Shown: positions 10,801-54,343, numbered from the stretch's first letter. The stretch: 64,000 nucleotides of DNA from Girardia tigrina (GCA_001938485.1 MQRK01230191.1:23341-87340); one strand, 5' to 3'. Made by a program: numbers and translations. Notes: generated by a model not told the origin, from the letters alone.

Positions 10801-13800
10801 TCAGTTACAGATTAAACAAGAATTTAGCTCATTCTATAAACGTTGTGTTAGTACGCAAGATTCAAACTTAATCAGTAATATCAAAGTTAATATTTCATAT
10901 TTTCACTCACTTTTAAAATGGATTTAAAGAATAACATAACTTTATCATATCACTAATAATGCAGATCATGTATAGATATCAAACTTTTGGTAAGACAAAA
11001 CTGTAAATTGTTTTTAAATACAATTTATAAGGTACCGAATTATTTGGAGAAGGGAGTAGAATGTTTCATATTTCGATAAATAATAAATAAATATTTTTAA
11101 TATTAATAGTAATTGTAGTGGAACTGTTTTAAGTATTAAAATGATAATAATGTGATAATATGGGAAAAAATGAGTTATAGATTGTTAAAAATTGTTAAAA
11201 TGCATTAGAAATTAGTTATAATATTAAAAGGTTTTCTTTTTAATTTTTAAACGGATTTTTAAAGTCAGTTTTAAACAAATGATTGAGGACCAATAATGAT
11301 CGTGACACCTCAACACTGGTGTCAGAAGTGGGATAGATCGATAGAAATTACTCTAACTCCACTTTAAAATATTTTAAATCATGACGACTAACTCAAAAAA
11401 ACAAAGTTTCGAGATCAGGTGATAATAAACATTCGTCTTTTATCAACCAGGGAAATTTAGCTAAAAGCACCCCTGGAAAAATTTATTTTCAACTACCCGA
11501 TTTTTCATTTGATAATCGCGGATCACCCTCCGAATAGATCACCTAAGACCAAACTCCGAGACTCAAAAGGTGTTGTTGACGAGGAGTTAGTGAAGTTTTT
11601 TTTTCTTTCGTGCAATATATAGTAATGTCAAAGGTATATTACTATCAAATAGGGACATCGACTTAAACGCGTTAGGTACTCTCGTCGTCAAGCTTTTGGC
11701 TGGGATTGGACAAGACATCAATAATCTTCACGACAAGACTTGTGATACAAAAACCTGGTAAATAACTGTGTAAATTGTAATCTATCAAAACTTACCAGAA
11801 AAAAAAATTAAAACAATCCTTTTTGTTGAGATGGACAAATCCGAACACATCCCTATGGACATAACTGAACCTTTACCAGTTAACAAATGCTATAGATACC
11901 TCTTAACTATTGTTGACAGGAAAACTAACTGGTTCGAGGTCATACCGATGAAAGAAATTACAACAAACGCCATTTGTCAGATGTTTGAGAAAGAGTGGAT
12001 CGCTCGTCATGGACCTCCAAAAAAGATCACGACAGATCAGAGACGACAATTTGAGTCCGAACAGTTTAGAATGCTATGTAACAATTACAACTTTAGGAGG
12101 ATCAGAACCAGTCCATATAATCTACAAGCTAATGGCAAGGCAGAAGTGTTCCATAGGTATTTGAAACATACACTTCGTACTAAATGTACTAATGAAAATT
12201 GACTCCATTACTTTGATGAAGTTTGTTTAGTCCTCAGAGTGATGGTATAATGTCTATTCGCATTTATATTCATATTTTTACACATTTTGTCCTGAATTGT
12301 GGATGACTTGTGTCAGTCATTGAAATTAGTTTAGATTTAAAGTTTCAACTCTGCAACTGTAAGTAATCTGGATTTACACTGAACTTGAAAATATGGAGCA
12401 TTCAAATAGACAAGATTTGAAGTAGAGTACATGAGATAAAATTACTTTTATATAAAATACAGTTCTTGCAGTAAATTTACAACATTTTTAAACCTTTGAA
12501 AAACCTAAAGAACTTATTAGGTAACCTAATATTACTTCAGATAGATCAAGATGTTTTTCATACATTTTTAATTCATGTTATCATAAATTTAAAGATGTCT
12601 TATTTTTATTGTCATACAAAAATATAGTATTCATAACATTGGAATAAGGTGTGTCCACTAAAAAAGTGCACAAGTTTTAAAACCATCGTAACTTTTTAAT
12701 TTAATATTATTTAATTTCGTAAATTTGAAATTTAAATATTTGTTTTAATAGATTAGAAATAGTAAAGCAGGTATTTAAAATTTTTGGTTTTTTTATGTTT
12801 TATTTTAGAGACAATTATAATGATTTCAAAACGACAGGAAGATATAATCAATTTTTTCAAAACGCACGGTAAAAGTGAGACTGTGACAAAGTTTACTGGC
12901 ATTCATTTTTCCAGAAGAGGTATATATGCAATAATACAACGCTATGAGAAGACCGGCAGCATTGAAAGAAAAGTAGGAAGGGGAAGGAAACCTGTTAAAA
13001 TGACGTCAGACAAAAGGAAGGACTTCTGCAGCGTGCAACTTTGATTGTTGGACAAAGTGTGAGAAGGTTAGGTAGAGAAATGAATGTTTCAAAGTCTTAC
13101 GTGCATAAGATGCTCAAGACTAATAACATAGTGTTTCGAAAGAGGAAAGAAGCCCCAAAGGTTACTCCGATACAGATTATTCGCCAGAAAGCCAGGTTGC
13201 AAAATCTCGCTAAAATTGTTGTGGAAAAGACCAAAACCGACTTTGTACTTGATGATGAGTCGTATTTTACACTCACCGGAGCAATGACATCAGGTTATTA
13301 TGTGGACCAAAAGAAGTTCATGATGTACCTGATAATATTCGCCTTAAATTTCGAGAGAAATTCACAGTAAAAGTTTTGGTTTGGGCAACTGTTTCCAGAC
13401 GAGGCATTTCAAACCTGTACATCAGGAAATGGAAATCTGTAGCTTCTAATTCGGATATTTATATCTCCGAGTGCTTAACGAAGCGTTTGCTTCCTTATCG
13501 GAATGAGAAATACCCAGCTGGTCACTTCATTTTTTGGCCAGATTTTGCTTCTTGTCACTACGCCAACAAAGCAAGTCTGAAGTGCTTAGAGGACAACAAA
13601 ATTCCATTTGTCAAAAAATATTCGAATCCACCTTGTGCTCCCCAAATACGCCCAATTGAAAAGTTTTGGGCTCATTTAAAGGAGAAGGTGTATGAAAAGG
13701 GTTGGACTGCCGATTCTGAAGACCAGTTGATTCGCAGAATCAAAACTAAAGCAAAGCAGTTTAACAATTTATATTTTAGGACATTTTTTTGCAAATTTTA

Positions 13801-16800
13801 GACAAAGAATAATGCTTGCTAACTCCTTGCTATGGCCTTAATAGTTTGATATAATAAAAAAGTTATTGTGTTATTATGATCTAGTCTTTGTTCAGATTTC
13901 CGTCAATTTGAAGGTCTAATTAAAAAGTTATGATGTTTTTAAAACTTGTGCACTTTTTTCGTGGACACACCTTAGATAATTAATAAAATAGGCAATTTGA
14001 TGCTTAAAGATTATTAAAATTTCTAGTTTATATTTTTTAATTTTTGTACATTTGAAAGACAGTTCTTAATCTAGTGATAATTAGAGTTAATAATTAAATT
14101 TTCTATCAATTGACAAAAATCTGCTCAATGAAAACTTTATAACTATAATTTCTTAATTATAAGTTAATAAAACCTTCAAAATTTATGGCACAAAAAAGTT
14201 ATTTACATCACTCTTCTCATCGATTGAAAGCTTCCTTCTTGCTCGATTCGCCAATATTATTGGAGTTACTTCTTTTTTTACATCAGTCTTAAATTTATAA
14301 TTTTCAAGTAGTTCTTTTCTGATAATTTAATTTTAATTTAGTAAGAATCATAACAATTTATTTACCTATCAGAAGAATAAGTATTTGTTTCACTGTCATA
14401 TTCATTTGTGGAATTGGAGTAAAAATTATTTGGAAAAGATTTTCTCTGTTTAGAATGAGGATGATTAGATTTCACTAAAAAAAGTAAAATAAGAATTAAA
14501 ACAAAACTATTATAAAAAAATACAATAAAAACGAATGGTGGTTCTCATTAATTTTTTTGACAAAGCAAATCAGTTTCACCATTACGAGACATTCAGAGTA
14601 ATTAAAATAAAATGATTAATTGCTATTCATACATGTAGATGTGTTCTTTAAAATCGATAGATACTGGAGATATTATTTTGAATAAGATATTGACGGCAAA
14701 AACTACCGGGAAAATTTCATTTAAAGTGTCGGCAGTTGATGCGAATAAATCGACAGCGAGTGATGTGTCGAGTGAGACCGAGGTCGTCACTAACGTGGAC
14801 GCTATCAACGATAATAGACCGAAGAGTTTAAGTCGAATCGGACGTCGGACAACGGGTCTGTGTTGATGATTAGGATTCGAGAAAACGAGCCGAGGCAGAA
14901 GTTTGTGGAGATTAAAGTGAACGATGAGGATTTGAGTGATAATGGCAAGGTGAATTGTGAATTGAAAGAATCATCGGTGTTGGAATTGAAGTCGATTGGC
15001 AGTAAAGATCTCGATTTGCCGGAAGATGAGGATGAAAAGAAAAGGTTGAAGGAAAAGACACAGAATTGCAGATATTCATAAAAACGCTTTCTGTCAAAAC
15101 AATTACCTTCGATGTGAAGAATCGAGAAACAATAAAACACATCAAAGCAAAAATTGAAAACAAGGAGGGAACTCCAAGTACCCTGCAAAAATTATGGTTC
15201 ACTGGGAAAGTTTTAAGAGATGAAATGTCAATAAAGGAGAGCAATATAATCAAGAATGCTACACTTCATCTTCTGTTTTGCCTGAAAGGAGGCATGGAAA
15301 TGGATGAAGATGAATTAGATAGAAAAATGCTTTGCCGAAGGAGTTCAAAAGATAAATTATTACAATTAAGAAGCAAGCTTGGACATGCGGAAATATCAAC
15401 TGAAGAACTCAATAGAACGATGGTTTCGTACAACGAAAGCTATATTGAAGTGCTGAAGTATTTCGAATCAATGGCAATTAATCCCAAGCGGTTAAAGAAA
15501 AAGGAGTATAGCTTAATAATCGACAAGGAGTTGACAAAATTAGAAGATCAAAAGGAATAGGTGCTGGCAACTGCAAAGCAGAGATTCAACATCAATCATA
15601 AACAGATCAAAGAGGAGGAACGAGTGCAGGCGGTGGAAGATAGAATTCCCATAAAATTCCAACCGGTAACATTACCCAATTTTTCTGGAAATGTGGGTGA
15701 GTATGAAAAATGAAAGCGAACTTTCGAGGCATGTGTCGATTCCTCGAAGATGTCAGATATTGTGAAGCAAATAATGTTGGATCAATGCCTTGTTGGCGAA
15801 CCAAAGACATTGATCAAAAATATCGATATAACCCAAGAATCCTACAAAATGATATTGGCCAAATTGGACAAACGATATGGAGGTGCTCAGAGGCAATACG
15901 CCAATTTAATGAGAGAAATAAATGAGTTCTTTCCAGTGAGGGCAAATAAATTAAAGGACCTAGAATGTTTCGTAGGATTGTTGGAAGCTATTATTTCCAG
16001 ATCAGAGAATAATAACAATGAAGTGGAGATTGAAGGAGGATTACTATACATTACTTTGTTGGCAAAATTACCTAAAGTTTTAGTCGAGTGTTGGGAGAGA
16101 ACTCGCCTTTCAAAAGGAAAACCTCAGAATTTATCAGTTTTAAACGATTGGCTGATAAATGAGGTAGAAATAAAGCGGACCGCTGCGGAAGCTGTTCGTG
16201 GTATCGGCATATTTAATCCCAAAAATCGAAAGAAACATATTCAAGAAATATGTAGTGGAAAAACCTTTTTTTCAAAAGGAAGAAAAAAGAGCAGCTCAAC
16301 CTGAAAGAGAATTTGGAAGGACACTATGTTGGGATTTTCAAAAAGGAGTTTGTAGAAGAGGAAATGCGTGCAGATACATACACGATTTAACAAAGGAAGA
16401 AAGTCCAATCAAATGCAAATATTTCGAATCCGGCAATTGTAGATTTGGGAGTAACTGTAGAAACCTACACTTGAAAAAGGATGTTTTAAATTCAGATCAA
16501 AATAAATACACGGAAGGTAAAGAAGAGCGAAAAGACAAAACACCAGAAGGAGAGTTTAATCAGATTCCGAGTGGTGGGACATTTGTCACTGATCTCATGG
16601 AGGAAAATGAATTCTCTGTGTCCTTGAGAACTGTGAGGAATATTTTAAATTTCGTATGTTGAAATTGGTTTGTTGAATTTTGTATGTTGAGTTTAGTATT
16701 TGGAAATGTGTTTCTCCCACCCAGATGGAAAATTGATATTTTAGATGTNNNNNNNNNNNNNNNNNNNNNNNNNNNNNNNNNNNNNNNNNNNNNNNNNNNN

Positions 16801-19800
16801 NNNNNNNNNNNNNNNNNNNNNNNNNNNNNNNNNNNNNNNNNNNNNNNNNNNNNNNNNNNNNNNNNNNNNNNNNNNNNNNNNNNNNNNNNNNNNNNNNNNN
16901 NNNNNNNNNNNNNNNNNNNNNNNNNNNNNNNNNNNNNNNNNNNNNNNNNNNNNNNNNNNNNNNNNNNNNNNNNNNNNNNNNNNNNNNNNNNNNNNNNNNN
17001 NNNNNNNNNNNNNNNNNNNNNNNNNNNNNNNNNNNNNNNNNNNNNNNNNNNNNNNNNNNNNNNNNNNNNNNNNNNNNNNNNNNNNNNNNNNNNNNNNNNN
17101 NNNNNNNNNNNNNNNNATTATCAATTTAGAACGATGTCGAATGACGAGAGTTTCGCTGAGAGTTGTCCAAAAGACAATTCTGATTGTAATGAAAATAAAA
17201 GTTTGAAAAGCCATGTTGGTGTTCTTAATAAGAACCATTCCCGTTTATCTAATAAATAAAGGAAATCGACTCAGAGTGAACCTGTTACTTGATGACGCTA
17301 ACACAAATTCTTTCATAATTAAAAATGTGGTTGACAAGTTGGGTTTAGTCGGAGAAACCAAAGAAATGAAAATTCGAGTTTTAAATGGTACCAAATCAGT
17401 AAAAGCTGATAGAGTAAATGTTGAACTGAATTCCACAAATGGATCGTTAAGACAAAGACTGAGTCTCTTAATCGTTGATGATGTAACTGAGACTAAAAAG
17501 TGTGTGATTGAGAAAAAATAAAATGCAAATGGCCACACTTGAAAGACATTCCGTTTGAAAATTTTGGAAAACAGAATCAGATTGATGGGCTTTTAGGAGC
17601 AGATTATTTAAATCTACAATATTCTATGAAAGAAGTTCAAGGACGATTAAATGAACCAATAGCTCGATTGATACCGCTCGGGTGGACCTGCGTTGGTAAA
17701 GTTTCGACAGAGAATTCATAAAAGGAGCAACTTTATGATGTGCTTCTTTACTGGAGAGAGACAACATAAGTCACAGGAATCAAGCGAGGCAAGTCGATTC
17801 AGGGCACATAATGGTGAACGACAGTTCAGAAAAGACCGAGTCAATGGAGAAGACTATAATCGAGTCAAATATTTTAAGGGTCAATCAAGTGTTAACTTTA
17901 ATCAAATTTTAAATGCTCCTCCGTACAGTAATAAAAATGATTTTGAAAACAACAAAATGGGTTACTTGGATGAAAATTGTAAAAATCGAGAATACAGAGG
18001 ACGAGATTGTTTTAAGGGAGAAAGAGGATTGTGTAGAGATCAAGGTGATTACCGACGACCAAGAGACGATGATCGAGGCAAAAATGCTAACGAAGGATTT
18101 TTTAACAATATGCCATTCGACAACCGTGAAATACCTATTACTGAAAAAGAGTCGGATTCATACAAAGATTATGTCGAGGCATCAGTCAAAAATGAAGCAA
18201 ATTATGAACCGAATGTTGTGGAAAATGAAACTATTGATATGACAAAATCGAGTTGGGGAGAAATTGAAGATGATACTGTGAAAATAAAAACCACTGAGAT
18301 TAAATTCCTTGGACAGTGGAAGGCTCACCATGGGAAAGATCAGCTAATGAATCAGAATAGTAAAGAAATTCGAAAAGCTAATGATGGTCCAGATGTTTTC
18401 AGTGGAACAGAGGAATACAGAAATGAGAGTTCTACTAAAGAACATACTGATGAACATGATGCTCATAAAAATCAATACGGTCGTCAAAAGCAATCGCTTA
18501 AAATGTTAGTTCGTTTTAGACTAATATTTTGGCGAGGTGAGTGCAAGTGGTCATGGCGAGGAGAATGTGAGTGTTCATGGCGAGTTGAGTGCAAGTGGTT
18601 GTTACGAGGATGGTATGGAAGGACGCGGCGAGGAGAACACTGTCGGAACGAGCGAGGAGACGGCGAGCATAGAGGGTCAACAGAGTCAGGACAATTATAC
18701 GGTATTAAAATTTTTTTCAAACTTTACATACTTACTCATTCTCGATGACAATAAATGATTATATGAAAATTTGATCGGAAAAAACCTTTTAAGATCCCAA
18801 AATGGGATAAAAACGGAAAATTTGGAGTTCCAGAGCAATATTAATTGTAAGATATCTACTTATAATTTATAAGTAGTCTATATTATTTTTTTGTCTAAAT
18901 TAAAATTTTGCATTGTTTGTTAATGTTGCGGCAGTGTTTTTGAAGTGCCTTTTTAAAGATAACAACTTTGTAACTGAATGCGCTGATGAATAATGTCACC
19001 CTCCGTCAAAACACTCACTATGTCACATCTCTCGGCCCACGAATAATGGTTGTTCTATTCAGCATCAAAACATGAAGTGTCAAATAATACGGGTCACAAT
19101 TCACCATTGGCAAGCTGAGTCTCCATCTCGTGTGATTGTATGCGTGTGTGAGTGTAATCCATCACTGATTATTGTGCAATTACACTTTTATTTGTCCTCA
19201 ATTGCTGACAAATAAAGCGAAATTACGTGAAATTATTATTATCAAAATTAATTAATATTAAATTTTTATTAGTTTTTTAATTAAACTTTTTGAAATTTTA
19301 AAATCTTTGTCGGCAAAGTAGAGTTCTGTCTGCATAAAGAATGGATATAAAAAATTTAATTTTTTGATTTACTAGTTTTATATTGAAAAAATGTCTTCTA
19401 GTTAATTATTAATAAATAATTATGATTAGTTAAAGCAATAATTAAATCAAATAAAAGTTTGAAAAAACAAATAATTAAGATAAATCACATTAATCATTAA
19501 AATAATAATTATAGCTAAATTTACTCGAATGTTTTGGTTCAGAAAATCCTAAATTTTTTTGATCAGCTAATTTGGAGGACATTATCTTTTCGAGATTTTT
19601 CATTTTCTCCGACATTTTTATAATATTATTAAGAATATTGTCGGTTTGTCGATTAGTATTTATCGCATCTTTTATGTATTTTCTGCTTTCTAGATCGTGC
19701 ATTTGCAGTTCGTCAACAGTCATCGGCTCCCAAGCTGCCAATTGACGTTCTTGTTTGATCATTATAGTTCAATATTATAGATCAAGAGTTGTTAGAACTT

Positions 19801-53458: not shown

Positions 53459-54200
53459 ATGATTGATAATAAGGACTTAAACGAATTGTCCATCAGTAAG
53501 AGCGAAATGTTTTCGCCGGGGCAATTCTAATCGGAAAGCGTTATCGAAGAGAATTTTATCGATTGCGGTATAAAAGACGTCGCGAATGTTCGATTGAGAC
53601 CGAACATTTCGACATTGAACTTACACTGTAATTCAATCATTGTTATTAGAGAATTGGATAATCTGAGTAACTTGAAGCATCTGGATTTGTCGTCGAATGC
53701 AATCACGAAAATTAGCGGTCTCGATTCACTGATTCATTTGAGAATGTTAAACCTAGCGGTGAATCGAATGATAAAATTGAAAGGATTGTCTCAATTGCGA
53801 CAATTGGTTAAATTAAATGCATTGTATAATGAGATTAGTGATCTAATGGGACTTAATGAACTCGCCAATACTCGCGGACAATCTTTGGCGTCCCTTGAGT
53901 TACACGCAAACAGAATCAGATTAACCAGTGATATCATAATAGTTTGTCAGAGACTCGGCAATCTTAAGATATTGATTCTGTGCGATGCGTATTCCAAAAA
54001 TCCAGTCTGTGGGACACCAGATTACCGACAAAAAGTGTTTTCAAGTCTCCCTCATCTGCGAATCCTCGACGACAGAGACAAGAGTGGTAAGTCGGTTGAC
54101 GTGAAAATCCTATCTGATAATCCCGGACTGGAACAGTTCATGGATTATCTCTCCAGCTCAACTGATCAATGTTCAGAGTTTAATTCCACCGTTAAAAACC
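53459..54200 (+). pseudogene. LRRCC1: Intronless N-terminal LRR region of LRRCC1/VFL1, in frame with Ub-Gag
   Basis: FIDCGIKDV..LNLHCNSI..LKHLDLSSNAITKISGL..LELHANRI..NPVCGTPDYRQKVFSSLPHLRILD..LEQFMDYLSSS follows the LRRCC1 N-terminus; in-frame ATG 53459, one TAA at 53528. Confidence 0.8.
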
Positions 54201-54343
54201 ATTTCAATGAACAAAAACTGATAGGATGGATTGGGAAAGACATGAAGCCTAAAATCATGAAAGTGAAAATAACAACAGTCAGAGAAAATGAAATAAAATA
54301 CGACCTCTTTGAAGATGAAATTAATTCTGCTGGGAAAAATCTC

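What the first reader, a model, noticed from the sequence alone, without database searches (positions are those of the whole stretch)
14639..17720. Second, divergent BEL/Pao with the same layout but protocadherin cargo
Seen: cadherin-repeat motifs (DAINDNRP; IRENEP..NDEDLSDNGKVNCEL) directly upstream of a 76-codon Ub ending LKGG|M, then DUF1759 Gag, CCCH fingers and protease. Frameshifts now separate the pieces. Two divergent elements 39 kb apart, each with a different intronless host fragment in the same slot, suggest a family property with variable cargo rather than a one-off rearrangement (inference). No PBS was found for this copy, so its 5' boundary is unproven.
Basis: partly seen in the sequence, partly recalled or inferred. 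Interest (0 to 1): 0.85.

Follow-up and report, generated by a model that had tools for sequence, protein, structure and literature searches.

The report
Retrotransposon family carrying a stolen protocadherin piece
This stretch is a dead, truncated copy of a helper-dependent BEL/Pao-type retrotransposon family that picked up about 1 kb of a host protocadherin gene, placed it in frame ahead of a ubiquitin-like domain and its capsid (Gag) gene, and then multiplied to well over 100 copies in the genome.

Summary

**What the window holds.** Window 14641-18698 is a decayed fragment cut off at both ends. It has no LTRs and no primer-binding site (PBS). It belongs to a multi-copy LTR element family laid out as cargo, ubiquitin-like domain (Ub), Gag (DUF1759), two CCCH fingers, protease, then about 330 aa of unknown sequence. 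The family has no reverse transcriptase or integrase.

**The assembly gap.** It lies wholly inside a nested insertion (16632-17231, 5-bp target duplication). Sister copies lack this insertion, so the gap hides no element sequence.

**The cargo is real.**
- A natural sister copy has one 575-aa open frame with Cadherin (2e-14) and ubiquitin (1e-16).
- The donor is a 943-aa single-exon host protocadherin, 93-95% identical in DNA over 771-1015 bp.
- All copies share one 3' junction, at a 5-nt microhomology (TGGCA).
- A sibling subfamily with 94-96% identical Ub-Gag has unrelated sequence upstream of that same point.

**Mechanism (inferred, untested).** Host deubiquitinases cut after LKGG and release Gag, which would make the position upstream of Ub tolerant of foreign sequence.

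**Other points.** Cargo pN/pS is 0.51, against 0.78-0.96 out of frame, which hints at constraint. First-stage readers of this scan had already noted cadherin-Ub-Gag and HSP90-Ub-Gag chimeras on other DNA of this genome.

The parts
14641..15001 (+). Remnant (3' 361 bp) of the protocadherin-derived cargo. It covers the end of one cadherin repeat, a DxNDN linker and the start of the next repeat. The copy is 5'-truncated at 14641, and there is a frame change at about 14821-14836.
   Evidence: 93% DNA identity to donor L052:2296-2665. Sisters continue upstream of 14641.
14997..15001 (+). Capture junction. TGGCA is shared by the donor gene, the cadherin family and the cadherin-less sibling subfamily.
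   Evidence: Donor homology ends at 15001. Sibling homology starts at 14995/14996.
15002..15065 (+). Acidic linker (DLDLPEDEDEKK...) between cargo and Ub. It is shared with the cadherin-less sibling. A frame change falls at about 15036-15066.
15066..15296 (+). Ubiquitin-like domain of 76 codons ending LKGG, followed by the Gag Met (15294-15296). Codon 1 is TTG (Leu).
   Evidence: PF00240 4.7e-19. 52% identity to a polyubiquitin unit. LKGG|M is kept in 14 of 18 scorable copies.
15294..16300 (+). Gag: an N-terminal helical region plus DUF1759. In-frame stops at 15558, 15711 and 16302.
   Evidence: PF03564 8.7e-9. One ORF in P0163.
16312..16470 (+). Two CCCH zinc fingers at the C-terminus of Gag, reached after a frame change at about 16219-16343.
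   Evidence: zf-CCCH families at about 1e-12 to 1e-10.
16632..17231 (.). Nested insertion of an unrelated repeat with a 5-bp target duplication (AGAAC). It contains the whole assembly gap 16749-17116.
   Evidence: Sisters and ENA contig L058 join 16631 to 17231. Both flanks match one repeat in L020. The duplication is read.
17232..17720 (+). Aspartic protease, homologous to the BEL/Pao protease of element B up to PLGWTC[VI]G. It is broken by several stops and frame changes. The motif reads LLDDA(N/S)T where D[ST]G is expected.
   Evidence: Asp_protease_2 7.8e-4 and 1e-4. 32% identity, E 1e-25, to window:55517-57853..
17721..18698 (+). Low-complexity coding region of about 330 aa that stands where RT, RNase H and integrase should be. 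The copy is 3'-truncated at 18698, 30 bp before the polypurine tract and 3' LTR seen in sisters.
   Evidence: No Pfam hit and no Atlas hit. In frame with the protease in L022 and L025. Sisters continue past this point.

Best explanation
**Shown.**
- Window 14641-18698 is a decayed fragment, truncated at both ends, of a multi-copy non-autonomous LTR retrotransposon family derived from BEL/Pao.
- Complete copies read: LTR of about 240-330 bp, PBS TGGTAGCAGAGCGTGGTT, a leader of about 400 nt, then one long ORF, then a polypurine tract and the 3' LTR.
- The ORF runs: protocadherin fragment, acidic linker, ubiquitin-like domain ending LKGG, Gag (DUF1759 plus two CCCH fingers), aspartic protease, and about 330 aa of unknown low-complexity sequence.
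- No copy examined has RT, RNase H or integrase. Copies must therefore be mobilised in trans by an autonomous relative.
- The cargo is 771-1015 bp of a single-exon host protocadherin (G000:C18981; residues about 80-417, cadherin repeats without signal peptide or membrane anchor).
- It was captured once. The join is at a 5-nt microhomology (TGGCA) to a pre-existing Ub-Gag-protease element, and the chimera then amplified to well over 100 copies.

**Inferred.**
- The join arose by template switching or illegitimate recombination, as in retroviral oncogene capture.
- The Ub-like domain is cut after Gly-Gly by host deubiquitinases. This would release Gag with its own Met and discard whatever lies upstream. 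That would explain why the position ahead of Ub tolerates different foreign segments in related elements.
- I put cleavage at about 0.5.
For: **Family and boundaries**
- 40 of 40 scored DNA matches (356 candidates) carry the cargo-Ub region at 88-94% identity.
- 135 protein matches to the cargo were found.
- Sisters are homologous to one another beyond both ends of the window copy.

**LTR element features**
- An LTR pair lies in contig C250234 (46383-46621 and 49262-49522), about 95% identical outside one indel.
- The PBS is conserved in 10 loci and in element B at window 53333.
- The polypurine tract is followed by an LTR starting TGGAAG.

**Single ORF**
- L009 has a 575-aa frame with Cadherin 2.1e-14 and ubiquitin 1.1e-16.
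- P0163 is a 492-aa Ub-Gag-CCCH protein.
- L025 and L022 read CCCH, protease and the unknown region in frame.

**Donor**
- L052:1414-4242 is a 943-aa open frame with six Cadherin domains (2.2e-65), a hydrophobic N-terminus taken as a signal peptide and a hydrophobic stretch taken as the membrane anchor, both read by eye from the translation.
- It aligns end to end with a 928-aa relative from another data set.
- L009:1100-1870 matches L052:1895-2665 at 92.9% with no gaps.
- Other host paralogues are only 36-39% identical in protein.

**One capture**
- All copies share the 3' junction at donor nt 1252, while the 5' end is at nt 238, 425 or about 480.

**No RT or integrase**
-. Sibling contig L058 shows the same.

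**BEL/Pao kinship**
- Ub-Gag is 25% identical and the protease 32% identical to element B.
- Element B has Peptidase_A17 at 4.4e-45.

**Gly-Gly**
- LKGG|M is kept in 14 of 18 copies and in the divergent element B.
Against: - Cleavage at Gly-Gly is untested. The tail reads G-L-K-G-G rather than R-L-R-G-G, and position 44 is Trp, so recognition by deubiquitinases is not assured.
- No autonomous partner with matching LTR ends was identified.
- One LTR pair lacks clear TG...CA ends and a clear target duplication.
- In one contig the two flanking LTRs are only 81% alike, probably because two copies are juxtaposed there.
- In the runs laid, no listed contig bridges the cargo-Ub junction, so transcription of the chimera is not shown.
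- Copy numbers are lower bounds taken from capped searches.
Confidence: 0.88

Rival explanations
1. The Ub-like domain is not cleaved. It stays on Gag as a cis-acting ubiquitin-like module, for example recruiting ESCRT or proteasome-shuttle factors as UBL domains do in DDI1-type proteins. The cadherin fragment would then remain attached to Gag.
For: - The tail and hydrophobic patch differ from ubiquitin (G72, K74, W44).
- Ub-like domains next to retropepsin-type proteins, and ubiquitin's role in retroviral budding, are established knowledge. This is recalled, not tested here.
- The Ub-like domain shows only weak constraint: pN/pS 0.63, with an interval overlapping the out-of-frame controls.
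Against: - Gly-Gly directly followed by the Gag Met is kept across elements that are only 25% identical. It is also kept in a Ty3/gypsy Ub-Gag.
- Different bulky N-terminal segments are tolerated (cadherin, LRR, an unrelated 90 aa). That is easier to explain if they are removed.
Confidence: 0.3
2. The cadherin cargo is not a neutral passenger. It has been kept because its protein benefits the element, for example through folding or stability of the polyprotein, or interference with a host process.
For: - In-frame pairwise pN/pS among 24 copies is 0.51 (0.42-0.63), against 0.78 and 0.96 in the two other frames. This resembles Gag: 0.40 against 0.75 and 0.91.
- Long open cargo frames persist in several copies.
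Against: - The cargo lacks a signal peptide and membrane anchor, and it starts and ends inside cadherin repeats.
- Its 5' part was shortened twice in derived subfamilies.
- A sibling subfamily thrives without it, with at least 150 matches.
- Pairwise statistics on related copies are not independent.
Confidence: 0.25
3. The cadherin-like stretch is only flanking host DNA (a pseudo-exon) next to an unrelated insertion, or an assembly chimera.
For: The window copy alone gives only a weak Cadherin hit (0.016) and has no LTR or PBS to define its edge.
Against: - The same cargo-linker-Ub junction occurs in more than 100 loci on different contigs.
- It also occurs in an independent ENA assembly (P0067).
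- It lies inside LTR-PBS boundaries in sisters.
Confidence: 0.01
4. These are members of a host gene family (domesticated Gag fused to cadherin and ubiquitin), not transposon copies.
For: Some copies keep long open frames, and pN/pS is below the out-of-frame controls.
Against: - LTRs, a PBS and a polypurine tract are present.
- There are hundreds of dispersed copies at 88-94% identity. Most have stops, frameshifts, internal deletions and nested insertions.
Confidence: 0.03

Closest known systems
BEL/Pao (Belpaoviridae) LTR retrotransposons
   Same: - LTR-PBS-gag-protease order.
- Gag with DUF1759.
- A protease homologous to that of a bona fide BEL/Pao in the same window (element B, Peptidase_A17 4.4e-45).
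- The same PBS as element B.
   Different: - No RT, RNase H or integrase; about 330 aa of unknown sequence stands there instead.
- CCCH rather than CCHC fingers.
- A ubiquitin-like domain and a host gene fragment ahead of Gag.
- I found no paper describing Ub-Gag in BEL/Pao. This library misses most subscription journals.
Gene-transducing retroelements: acutely transforming retroviruses and the maize Bs1 LTR retrotransposon (recalled from general knowledge, not checked in a paper here)
   Same: - A host coding fragment sits inside the LTRs and is fused in frame to the Gag ORF.
- The element lacks pol and depends on a helper.
- The junction lies at a short microhomology.
   Different: - The cargo is N-terminal to Gag and separated from it by a ubiquitin-like domain.
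- The loss of pol predates the capture, because the cadherin-less sibling also lacks RT.
- The chimera amplified to well over 100 genomic copies in an invertebrate.
Cytopathic pestivirus (BVDV) strains with host ubiquitin inserted upstream of NS3 (recalled from general knowledge)
   Same: A host-type ubiquitin unit with C-terminal Gly-Gly is placed directly before a viral protein whose authentic N-terminus would be produced by cellular ubiquitin hydrolases.
   Different: - Here the carrier is a retrotransposon, not an RNA virus.
- The Ub unit is old and diverged: 52% identical to ubiquitin, and 25% identity across Ub-Gag between the two window elements.
- Cleavage is not demonstrated.
Natural ubiquitin-fusion genes (polyubiquitin, UBA52, RPS27A)
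   Same: A 76-residue Ub unit ending Gly-Gly is followed directly by the next protein.
   Different: The unit is internal, with foreign sequence upstream. Residue 1 is Leu or Trp, and the tail is GLKGG.

Membership tests
BEL/Pao LTR retrotransposon (autonomous) | Two LTRs, with a PBS after the 5' LTR and a polypurine tract before the 3' LTR | tested here: met
   Met for the family: the LTR pair in C250234, the PBS in 10 loci, and a polypurine tract followed by TGGAAG. Not present in the window copy, which is truncated at 14641 and 18698.
BEL/Pao LTR retrotransposon (autonomous) | Gag of the DUF1759 type | tested here: met
   PF03564 at 8.7e-9 in the window and 2.8e-13 in P0163.
BEL/Pao LTR retrotransposon (autonomous) | Pao-type aspartic protease | tested here: inconclusive
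   Homologous to the protease of element B (32% identity, E 1e-25) and a weak Asp_protease_2 hit. The expected D-[ST]-G reads D-D-A, so activity is doubtful.
BEL/Pao LTR retrotransposon (autonomous) | Reverse transcriptase, RNase H (Peptidase_A17 model) and integrase downstream of the protease | tested here: not met
   No such Pfam hit in the window or in sister ORFs, and no alignment to element B pol beyond the protease. Sibling contig L058 lacks them as well. The family is therefore a non-autonomous derivative.
Ubiquitin family (PF00240) | Ubiquitin-type domain of 76 residues with C-terminal Gly-Gly | tested here: met
   PF00240 at 4.7e-19 above its cut-off. 52% identity to a polyubiquitin unit. 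LKGG kept in 14 of 18 copies.
Ubiquitin family (PF00240) | Processing after Gly76 by deubiquitinases | not testable with these tools
   Inferred only from the conserved Gly-Gly followed by Met.
Protocadherin / cadherin superfamily | Cadherin repeats with calcium-binding linker motifs (DxNDN) | tested here: met
   PF00028 at 2.1e-14 over the full profile in L009. 4757 cadherin hits. DxNDN motifs are visible.
Protocadherin / cadherin superfamily | Complete receptor: signal peptide, full ectodomain, transmembrane helix | tested here: not met
   The cargo covers only donor residues about 80-417 or less. The donor L052 has all of these parts, but the cargo does not.
Gene-transducing, helper-dependent retroelement | Host-derived coding sequence inside the element with an identifiable donor, no pol, and propagation as part of the element | tested here: met
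   Donor at 93-95% DNA identity. The same junction occurs in more than 100 loci. No RT or integrase.

The most novel reading that the evidence does not exclude
In this animal lineage, LTR retrotransposons of at least two superfamilies (BEL/Pao and Ty3/gypsy) use an N-terminal ubiquitin unit as a release module cut by host enzymes. This would create a permissive slot upstream of Gag into which host coding fragments are repeatedly recruited and then amplified genome-wide. Candidates seen so far are protocadherin, LRR, possibly HSP90 and others. At least the cadherin cargo would be kept under purifying selection, so it would act as an element-encoded accessory protein rather than junk.
Probability: 0.3. 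Interest if true: 0.85.

Novelty: new variant of a known kind. Interest (0 to 1): 0.68.

Why it matters
Capture of host genes by LTR retrotransposons is well documented for retroviruses and a few plant elements, but rarely for invertebrate elements. I also found no description of a ubiquitin unit fused ahead of Gag.

This locus offers four things together:
- an identified donor gene;
- a mapped microhomology junction;
- a sibling lineage without the cargo;
- more than 100 amplified copies.

Together they make a natural experiment on how retroelements acquire and carry host coding sequence. They also give a directly testable idea: a ubiquitin unit lets the element tolerate, or exploit, N-terminal additions, because host deubiquitinases restore the native Gag.

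The family also matters for genome annotation. Its many copies hold cadherin-like open frames that gene predictors could miscall as protocadherin genes.

Tried and rejected
- **Window boundaries as element ends.** I first read the sharp homology boundaries at 14641 and 18698 as the element's true ends, with no LTRs. I rejected this: sisters are homologous to one another beyond both points, so the window copy is truncated.
- **LTR holding the cadherin-like sequence.** I looked for an LTR starting TGTG at 14640. There is no matching direct repeat in the window.
- **A 1275-aa ORF in L045.** It is an artefact of an N run.
- **LTR pair in C236244.** The two flanks are only 81% alike over 130 bp, probably two juxtaposed copies, so I did not use it.
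- **The region after the protease.** No Pfam hit, no Atlas hit, and no similarity to element B pol.
- **Literature.** Four searches found nothing on Ub-Gag in BEL/Pao or other LTR elements.
- **Transcription.**
  - Contigs of four runs (three only guessed to be RNA) show the donor's own continuation at 15001.
  - They also show the cadherin-less junction at 14996.
  - No listed contig bridges the cargo-Ub junction, so expression of the chimera is not shown.
- **Consensus.** None was built. Natural intact sister ORFs were used instead.
- **Gap.** Its letters were neither filled nor looked up.


Full report
**Setting.** The window comes from an AT-rich genome (about 30% GC) of 1.43 Gb in 255,254 contigs. 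The closest named homologues of the donor gene are flatworm cadherins, then mollusc and fish protocadherins. Near-identical sequence occurs in freshwater, sediment, biofilm and leaf-litter data sets. The host is therefore probably a free-living invertebrate, possibly a flatworm. This was not established.

**Observation.**
- Pfam on the window's own open frames confirms ubiquitin (4.7e-19), DUF1759 (8.7e-9), two CCCH fingers (about 1e-12) and a weak aspartic protease (7.8e-4). Cadherin reaches only 0.016 on the broken pieces.
- The Ub unit is 76 codons (15066-15293) ending LKGG, followed by Met. Its first codon is TTG (Leu; Leu or Trp in sisters), so it cannot be the start of translation.
- The copy is broken by:
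  - frame changes near 14821-14836, 15036-15066 and 16219-16343;
  - in-frame stops at 15558, 15711 and 16302;
  - several stops in the protease.

**The gap.**
- In at least a dozen sister copies, and in an independent ENA contig, window 16631 joins 17231 directly with a 5-bp overlap.
- AGAAC flanks both sides.
- The stretches on either side of the N run (16632-16748 and 17117-17230) match the two ends of one unrelated repeat that is also present in L020.
- The gap therefore lies wholly within a nested insertion and hides no element sequence.
- In natural sisters (L025) the CCCH-to-protease frame is continuous across this point.

**It is a family, and the window copy is a fragment.**
- A DNA search of the genome with 14600-15300 gave 40 of 40 scored matches (356 candidates) at 88-94% identity. 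All start at query base 41-42 or later.
- The 3' part gave matches that all end at window 18698.
- These sharp edges are truncations of the window copy. Sister copies are homologous to one another for 0.4-1.1 kb upstream of 14641 and 90-300 bp downstream of 18698.
- Neither the missing 5' part nor an LTR is found elsewhere in the window.

**LTR element features.**
- Upstream and downstream flanks of different copies match each other.
- One copy (contig C250234) has a direct repeat pair about 95% identical outside one indel.
- The 3' LTR starts TGGAAG directly after a polypurine tract (GCGGGGGAGGAA).
- The 5' LTR is followed by TGGTAGCAGAGCGTGGTT, conserved in 10 loci. The identical 18-mer stands at window 53333 in element B.
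- From memory this resembles the complement of the 3' end of initiator tRNA-Met. I did not test that.
In sister L009 the PBS lies about 0.9 kb upstream of the point where the window copy is truncated.

**Coding capacity.**
- L009 has one 575-aa frame with Cadherin (2.1e-14, full profile) and ubiquitin (1.1e-16), running into Gag.
- P0163 is a 492-aa Ub-Gag-CCCH protein.
- L025 and L022 read CCCH, protease and about 330 aa of low-complexity sequence in one frame, up to the polypurine tract.
- That last region has no Pfam or Atlas match and does not align to pol of element B.
- No copy examined, in either subfamily, has RT, RNase H or integrase. The family is non-autonomous.
- Its Gag and protease are homologous (25% and 32% identity) to those of element B, which is a true BEL/Pao with Peptidase_A17 (4.4e-45), RVT_1 and Integrase_H2C2.
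- The protease motif reads D-D-A where D-[ST]-G is expected.

**Donor.**
- A protein search of the genome with the cargo found, besides more than 100 element copies, a 943-aa uninterrupted frame in contig C18981 at 84% protein identity. The next host paralogue is at 39%.
- A 928-aa relative from another data set (P0112) aligns to that frame end to end at 54%.
- The frame has a hydrophobic N-terminus that I take as a signal peptide, six Cadherin domains (2.2e-65), a hydrophobic stretch that I take as a transmembrane helix, and a short tail. The domains are a Pfam result; the signal peptide and helix are read by eye.
- L009:1100-1870 equals L052:1895-2665 at 92.9% with no gaps. Window 14641-15001 matches at 93%.
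- Subfamily L002/L003/L005 carries 1015 bp (donor nt 238-1252) at 94.3-94.8%. L010-12 start at nt 425, and most copies start at about nt 480.
- All copies end at donor nt 1252. This points to one capture followed by loss of 5' cargo.
- Because the donor region is a single exon, the absence of introns does not tell RNA capture from DNA capture.

**The slot.**
- Two ENA contigs (L051, L058), and at least 150 matches in this genome, carry Ub-Gag 94-96% identical to the window. Their homology begins at 14995/14996, and the sequence upstream is unrelated.
- Donor, chimera and sibling share TGGCA at the crossover. This fits template switching or illegitimate recombination.
- L058 also lacks RT, so the loss of pol came before the capture.
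- Element B has an LRR segment, Ub and Gag in one ORF behind the same PBS. Its first 130 residues recur in at least 60 loci, some with open frames up to 2466 aa.
- A Ty3/gypsy element in an ENA contig also encodes Ub-Gag.
- First-stage notes of this scan list further Ub-Gag chimeras in this genome, including a cadherin one and an HSP90 one. Those notes are unchecked leads.

**Constraint.**
- Pairwise pN/pS among copies, in frame against the two other frames:

| Region | In frame | Out of frame |
|---|---|---|
| Cargo | 0.51 (0.42-0.63) | 0.78, 0.96 |
| Gag | 0.40 | 0.75, 0.91 |
| Ub | 0.63 | 0.80, 0.75 |

- The result is suggestive only, because the pairs are not independent.
- LKGG|M is kept in 14 of 18 scorable copies.

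**Mechanism.**
- Shown: the architecture, the donor, the junction, the amplification and the lack of pol.
- Inferred: mobilisation in trans by an autonomous relative, and cleavage after Gly-Gly by host deubiquitinases. The latter draws on polyubiquitin, ribosomal Ub fusions and ubiquitin-carrying pestiviruses, which is general knowledge.
- Cleavage would free Gag and would explain the tolerance for varied upstream segments.
- The tail (GLKGG) and Trp44 differ from ubiquitin, so cleavage is about even odds.

**Expression.** Contigs of four runs (three only guessed to be RNA) cover the region. They show the donor's own continuation at 15001 and the cadherin-less junction at 14996. No listed contig bridges the cargo-Ub junction.

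**Verdict.** The finding is real and the core reading is right. The window copy itself is a dead fragment. The family is a new variant of gene-transducing, helper-dependent retroelements with an undescribed ubiquitin-Gag layout. Following the rules for proviral sequence, I built no consensus and proposed no repair.

Noticed in passing
window 16632-17231: A nested insertion of an unrelated repeat with a 5-bp target duplication (AGAAC). It starts TGTGAGG, so it may be a solo LTR. Its two ends recur in L020:2434-2550 and 2851-2964.
   Followed up: partly
window 17721-18698; L035:2041-3036; L022:1378-2772: An Arg/Gly/Asp/Asn-rich coding region of about 330 aa, in frame after the protease, replaces RT and integrase in this family. 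It has no Pfam or Atlas match, and its origin is unknown. It may be another captured segment.
   Followed up: partly
window 17267-17300 and sister L025: The protease active-site position reads LLDDA(N/S)T instead of D-[ST]-G. Element B has LLDAGS. The family's protease may be inactive.
   Followed up: no
G000:C195327:12502-12621: A 1243-aa open frame holds a 40-aa, 90% match to the N-terminal segment of the cadherin-less sibling subfamily. It may be a second host donor. It could not be fetched.
   Followed up: no
window 53594-54343 (element B): The first 130 residues of the LRR segment ahead of Ub recur in at least 60 loci at 71-89% identity. Several have uninterrupted frames of 1200-2466 aa. 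In that clade the LRR part looks like an old, stable N-terminal module rather than a recent cargo.
   Followed up: partly
L059 (ENA contig, 5653 bp): A Ty3/gypsy-type element (RT_RNaseH, rve, SH3_Tf2-1) whose Gag ORF starts with a ubiquitin-like domain ending RLIGG. The 5' end of the contig (L059:3-419) reads like a Rab GTPase fragment (GIIVVYDV...DSFDNVKNW).
   Followed up: partly
window 15005 (runs X9, X13): Contig ends carry a third, different sequence upstream of the linker (ending ...CACTAAAG). This hints at yet another upstream variant in related organisms.
   Followed up: no
window 12784-13801: Three consecutive open frames give weak HTH and DDE_3 hits. They look like a decayed Tc1/mariner-type transposase just upstream of the truncated element.
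   Followed up: no
window 18709-18917 and 19230-19378: Other repeats directly follow the 3' truncation point. They match L049:9543-9849 in inverted orientation.
   Followed up: no
window 14976-15042: Summed contig depth in runs X9 and X11 spikes about 100-fold over the GA-rich linker. This is probably an unrelated abundant sequence sharing the low-complexity words.
   Followed up: no
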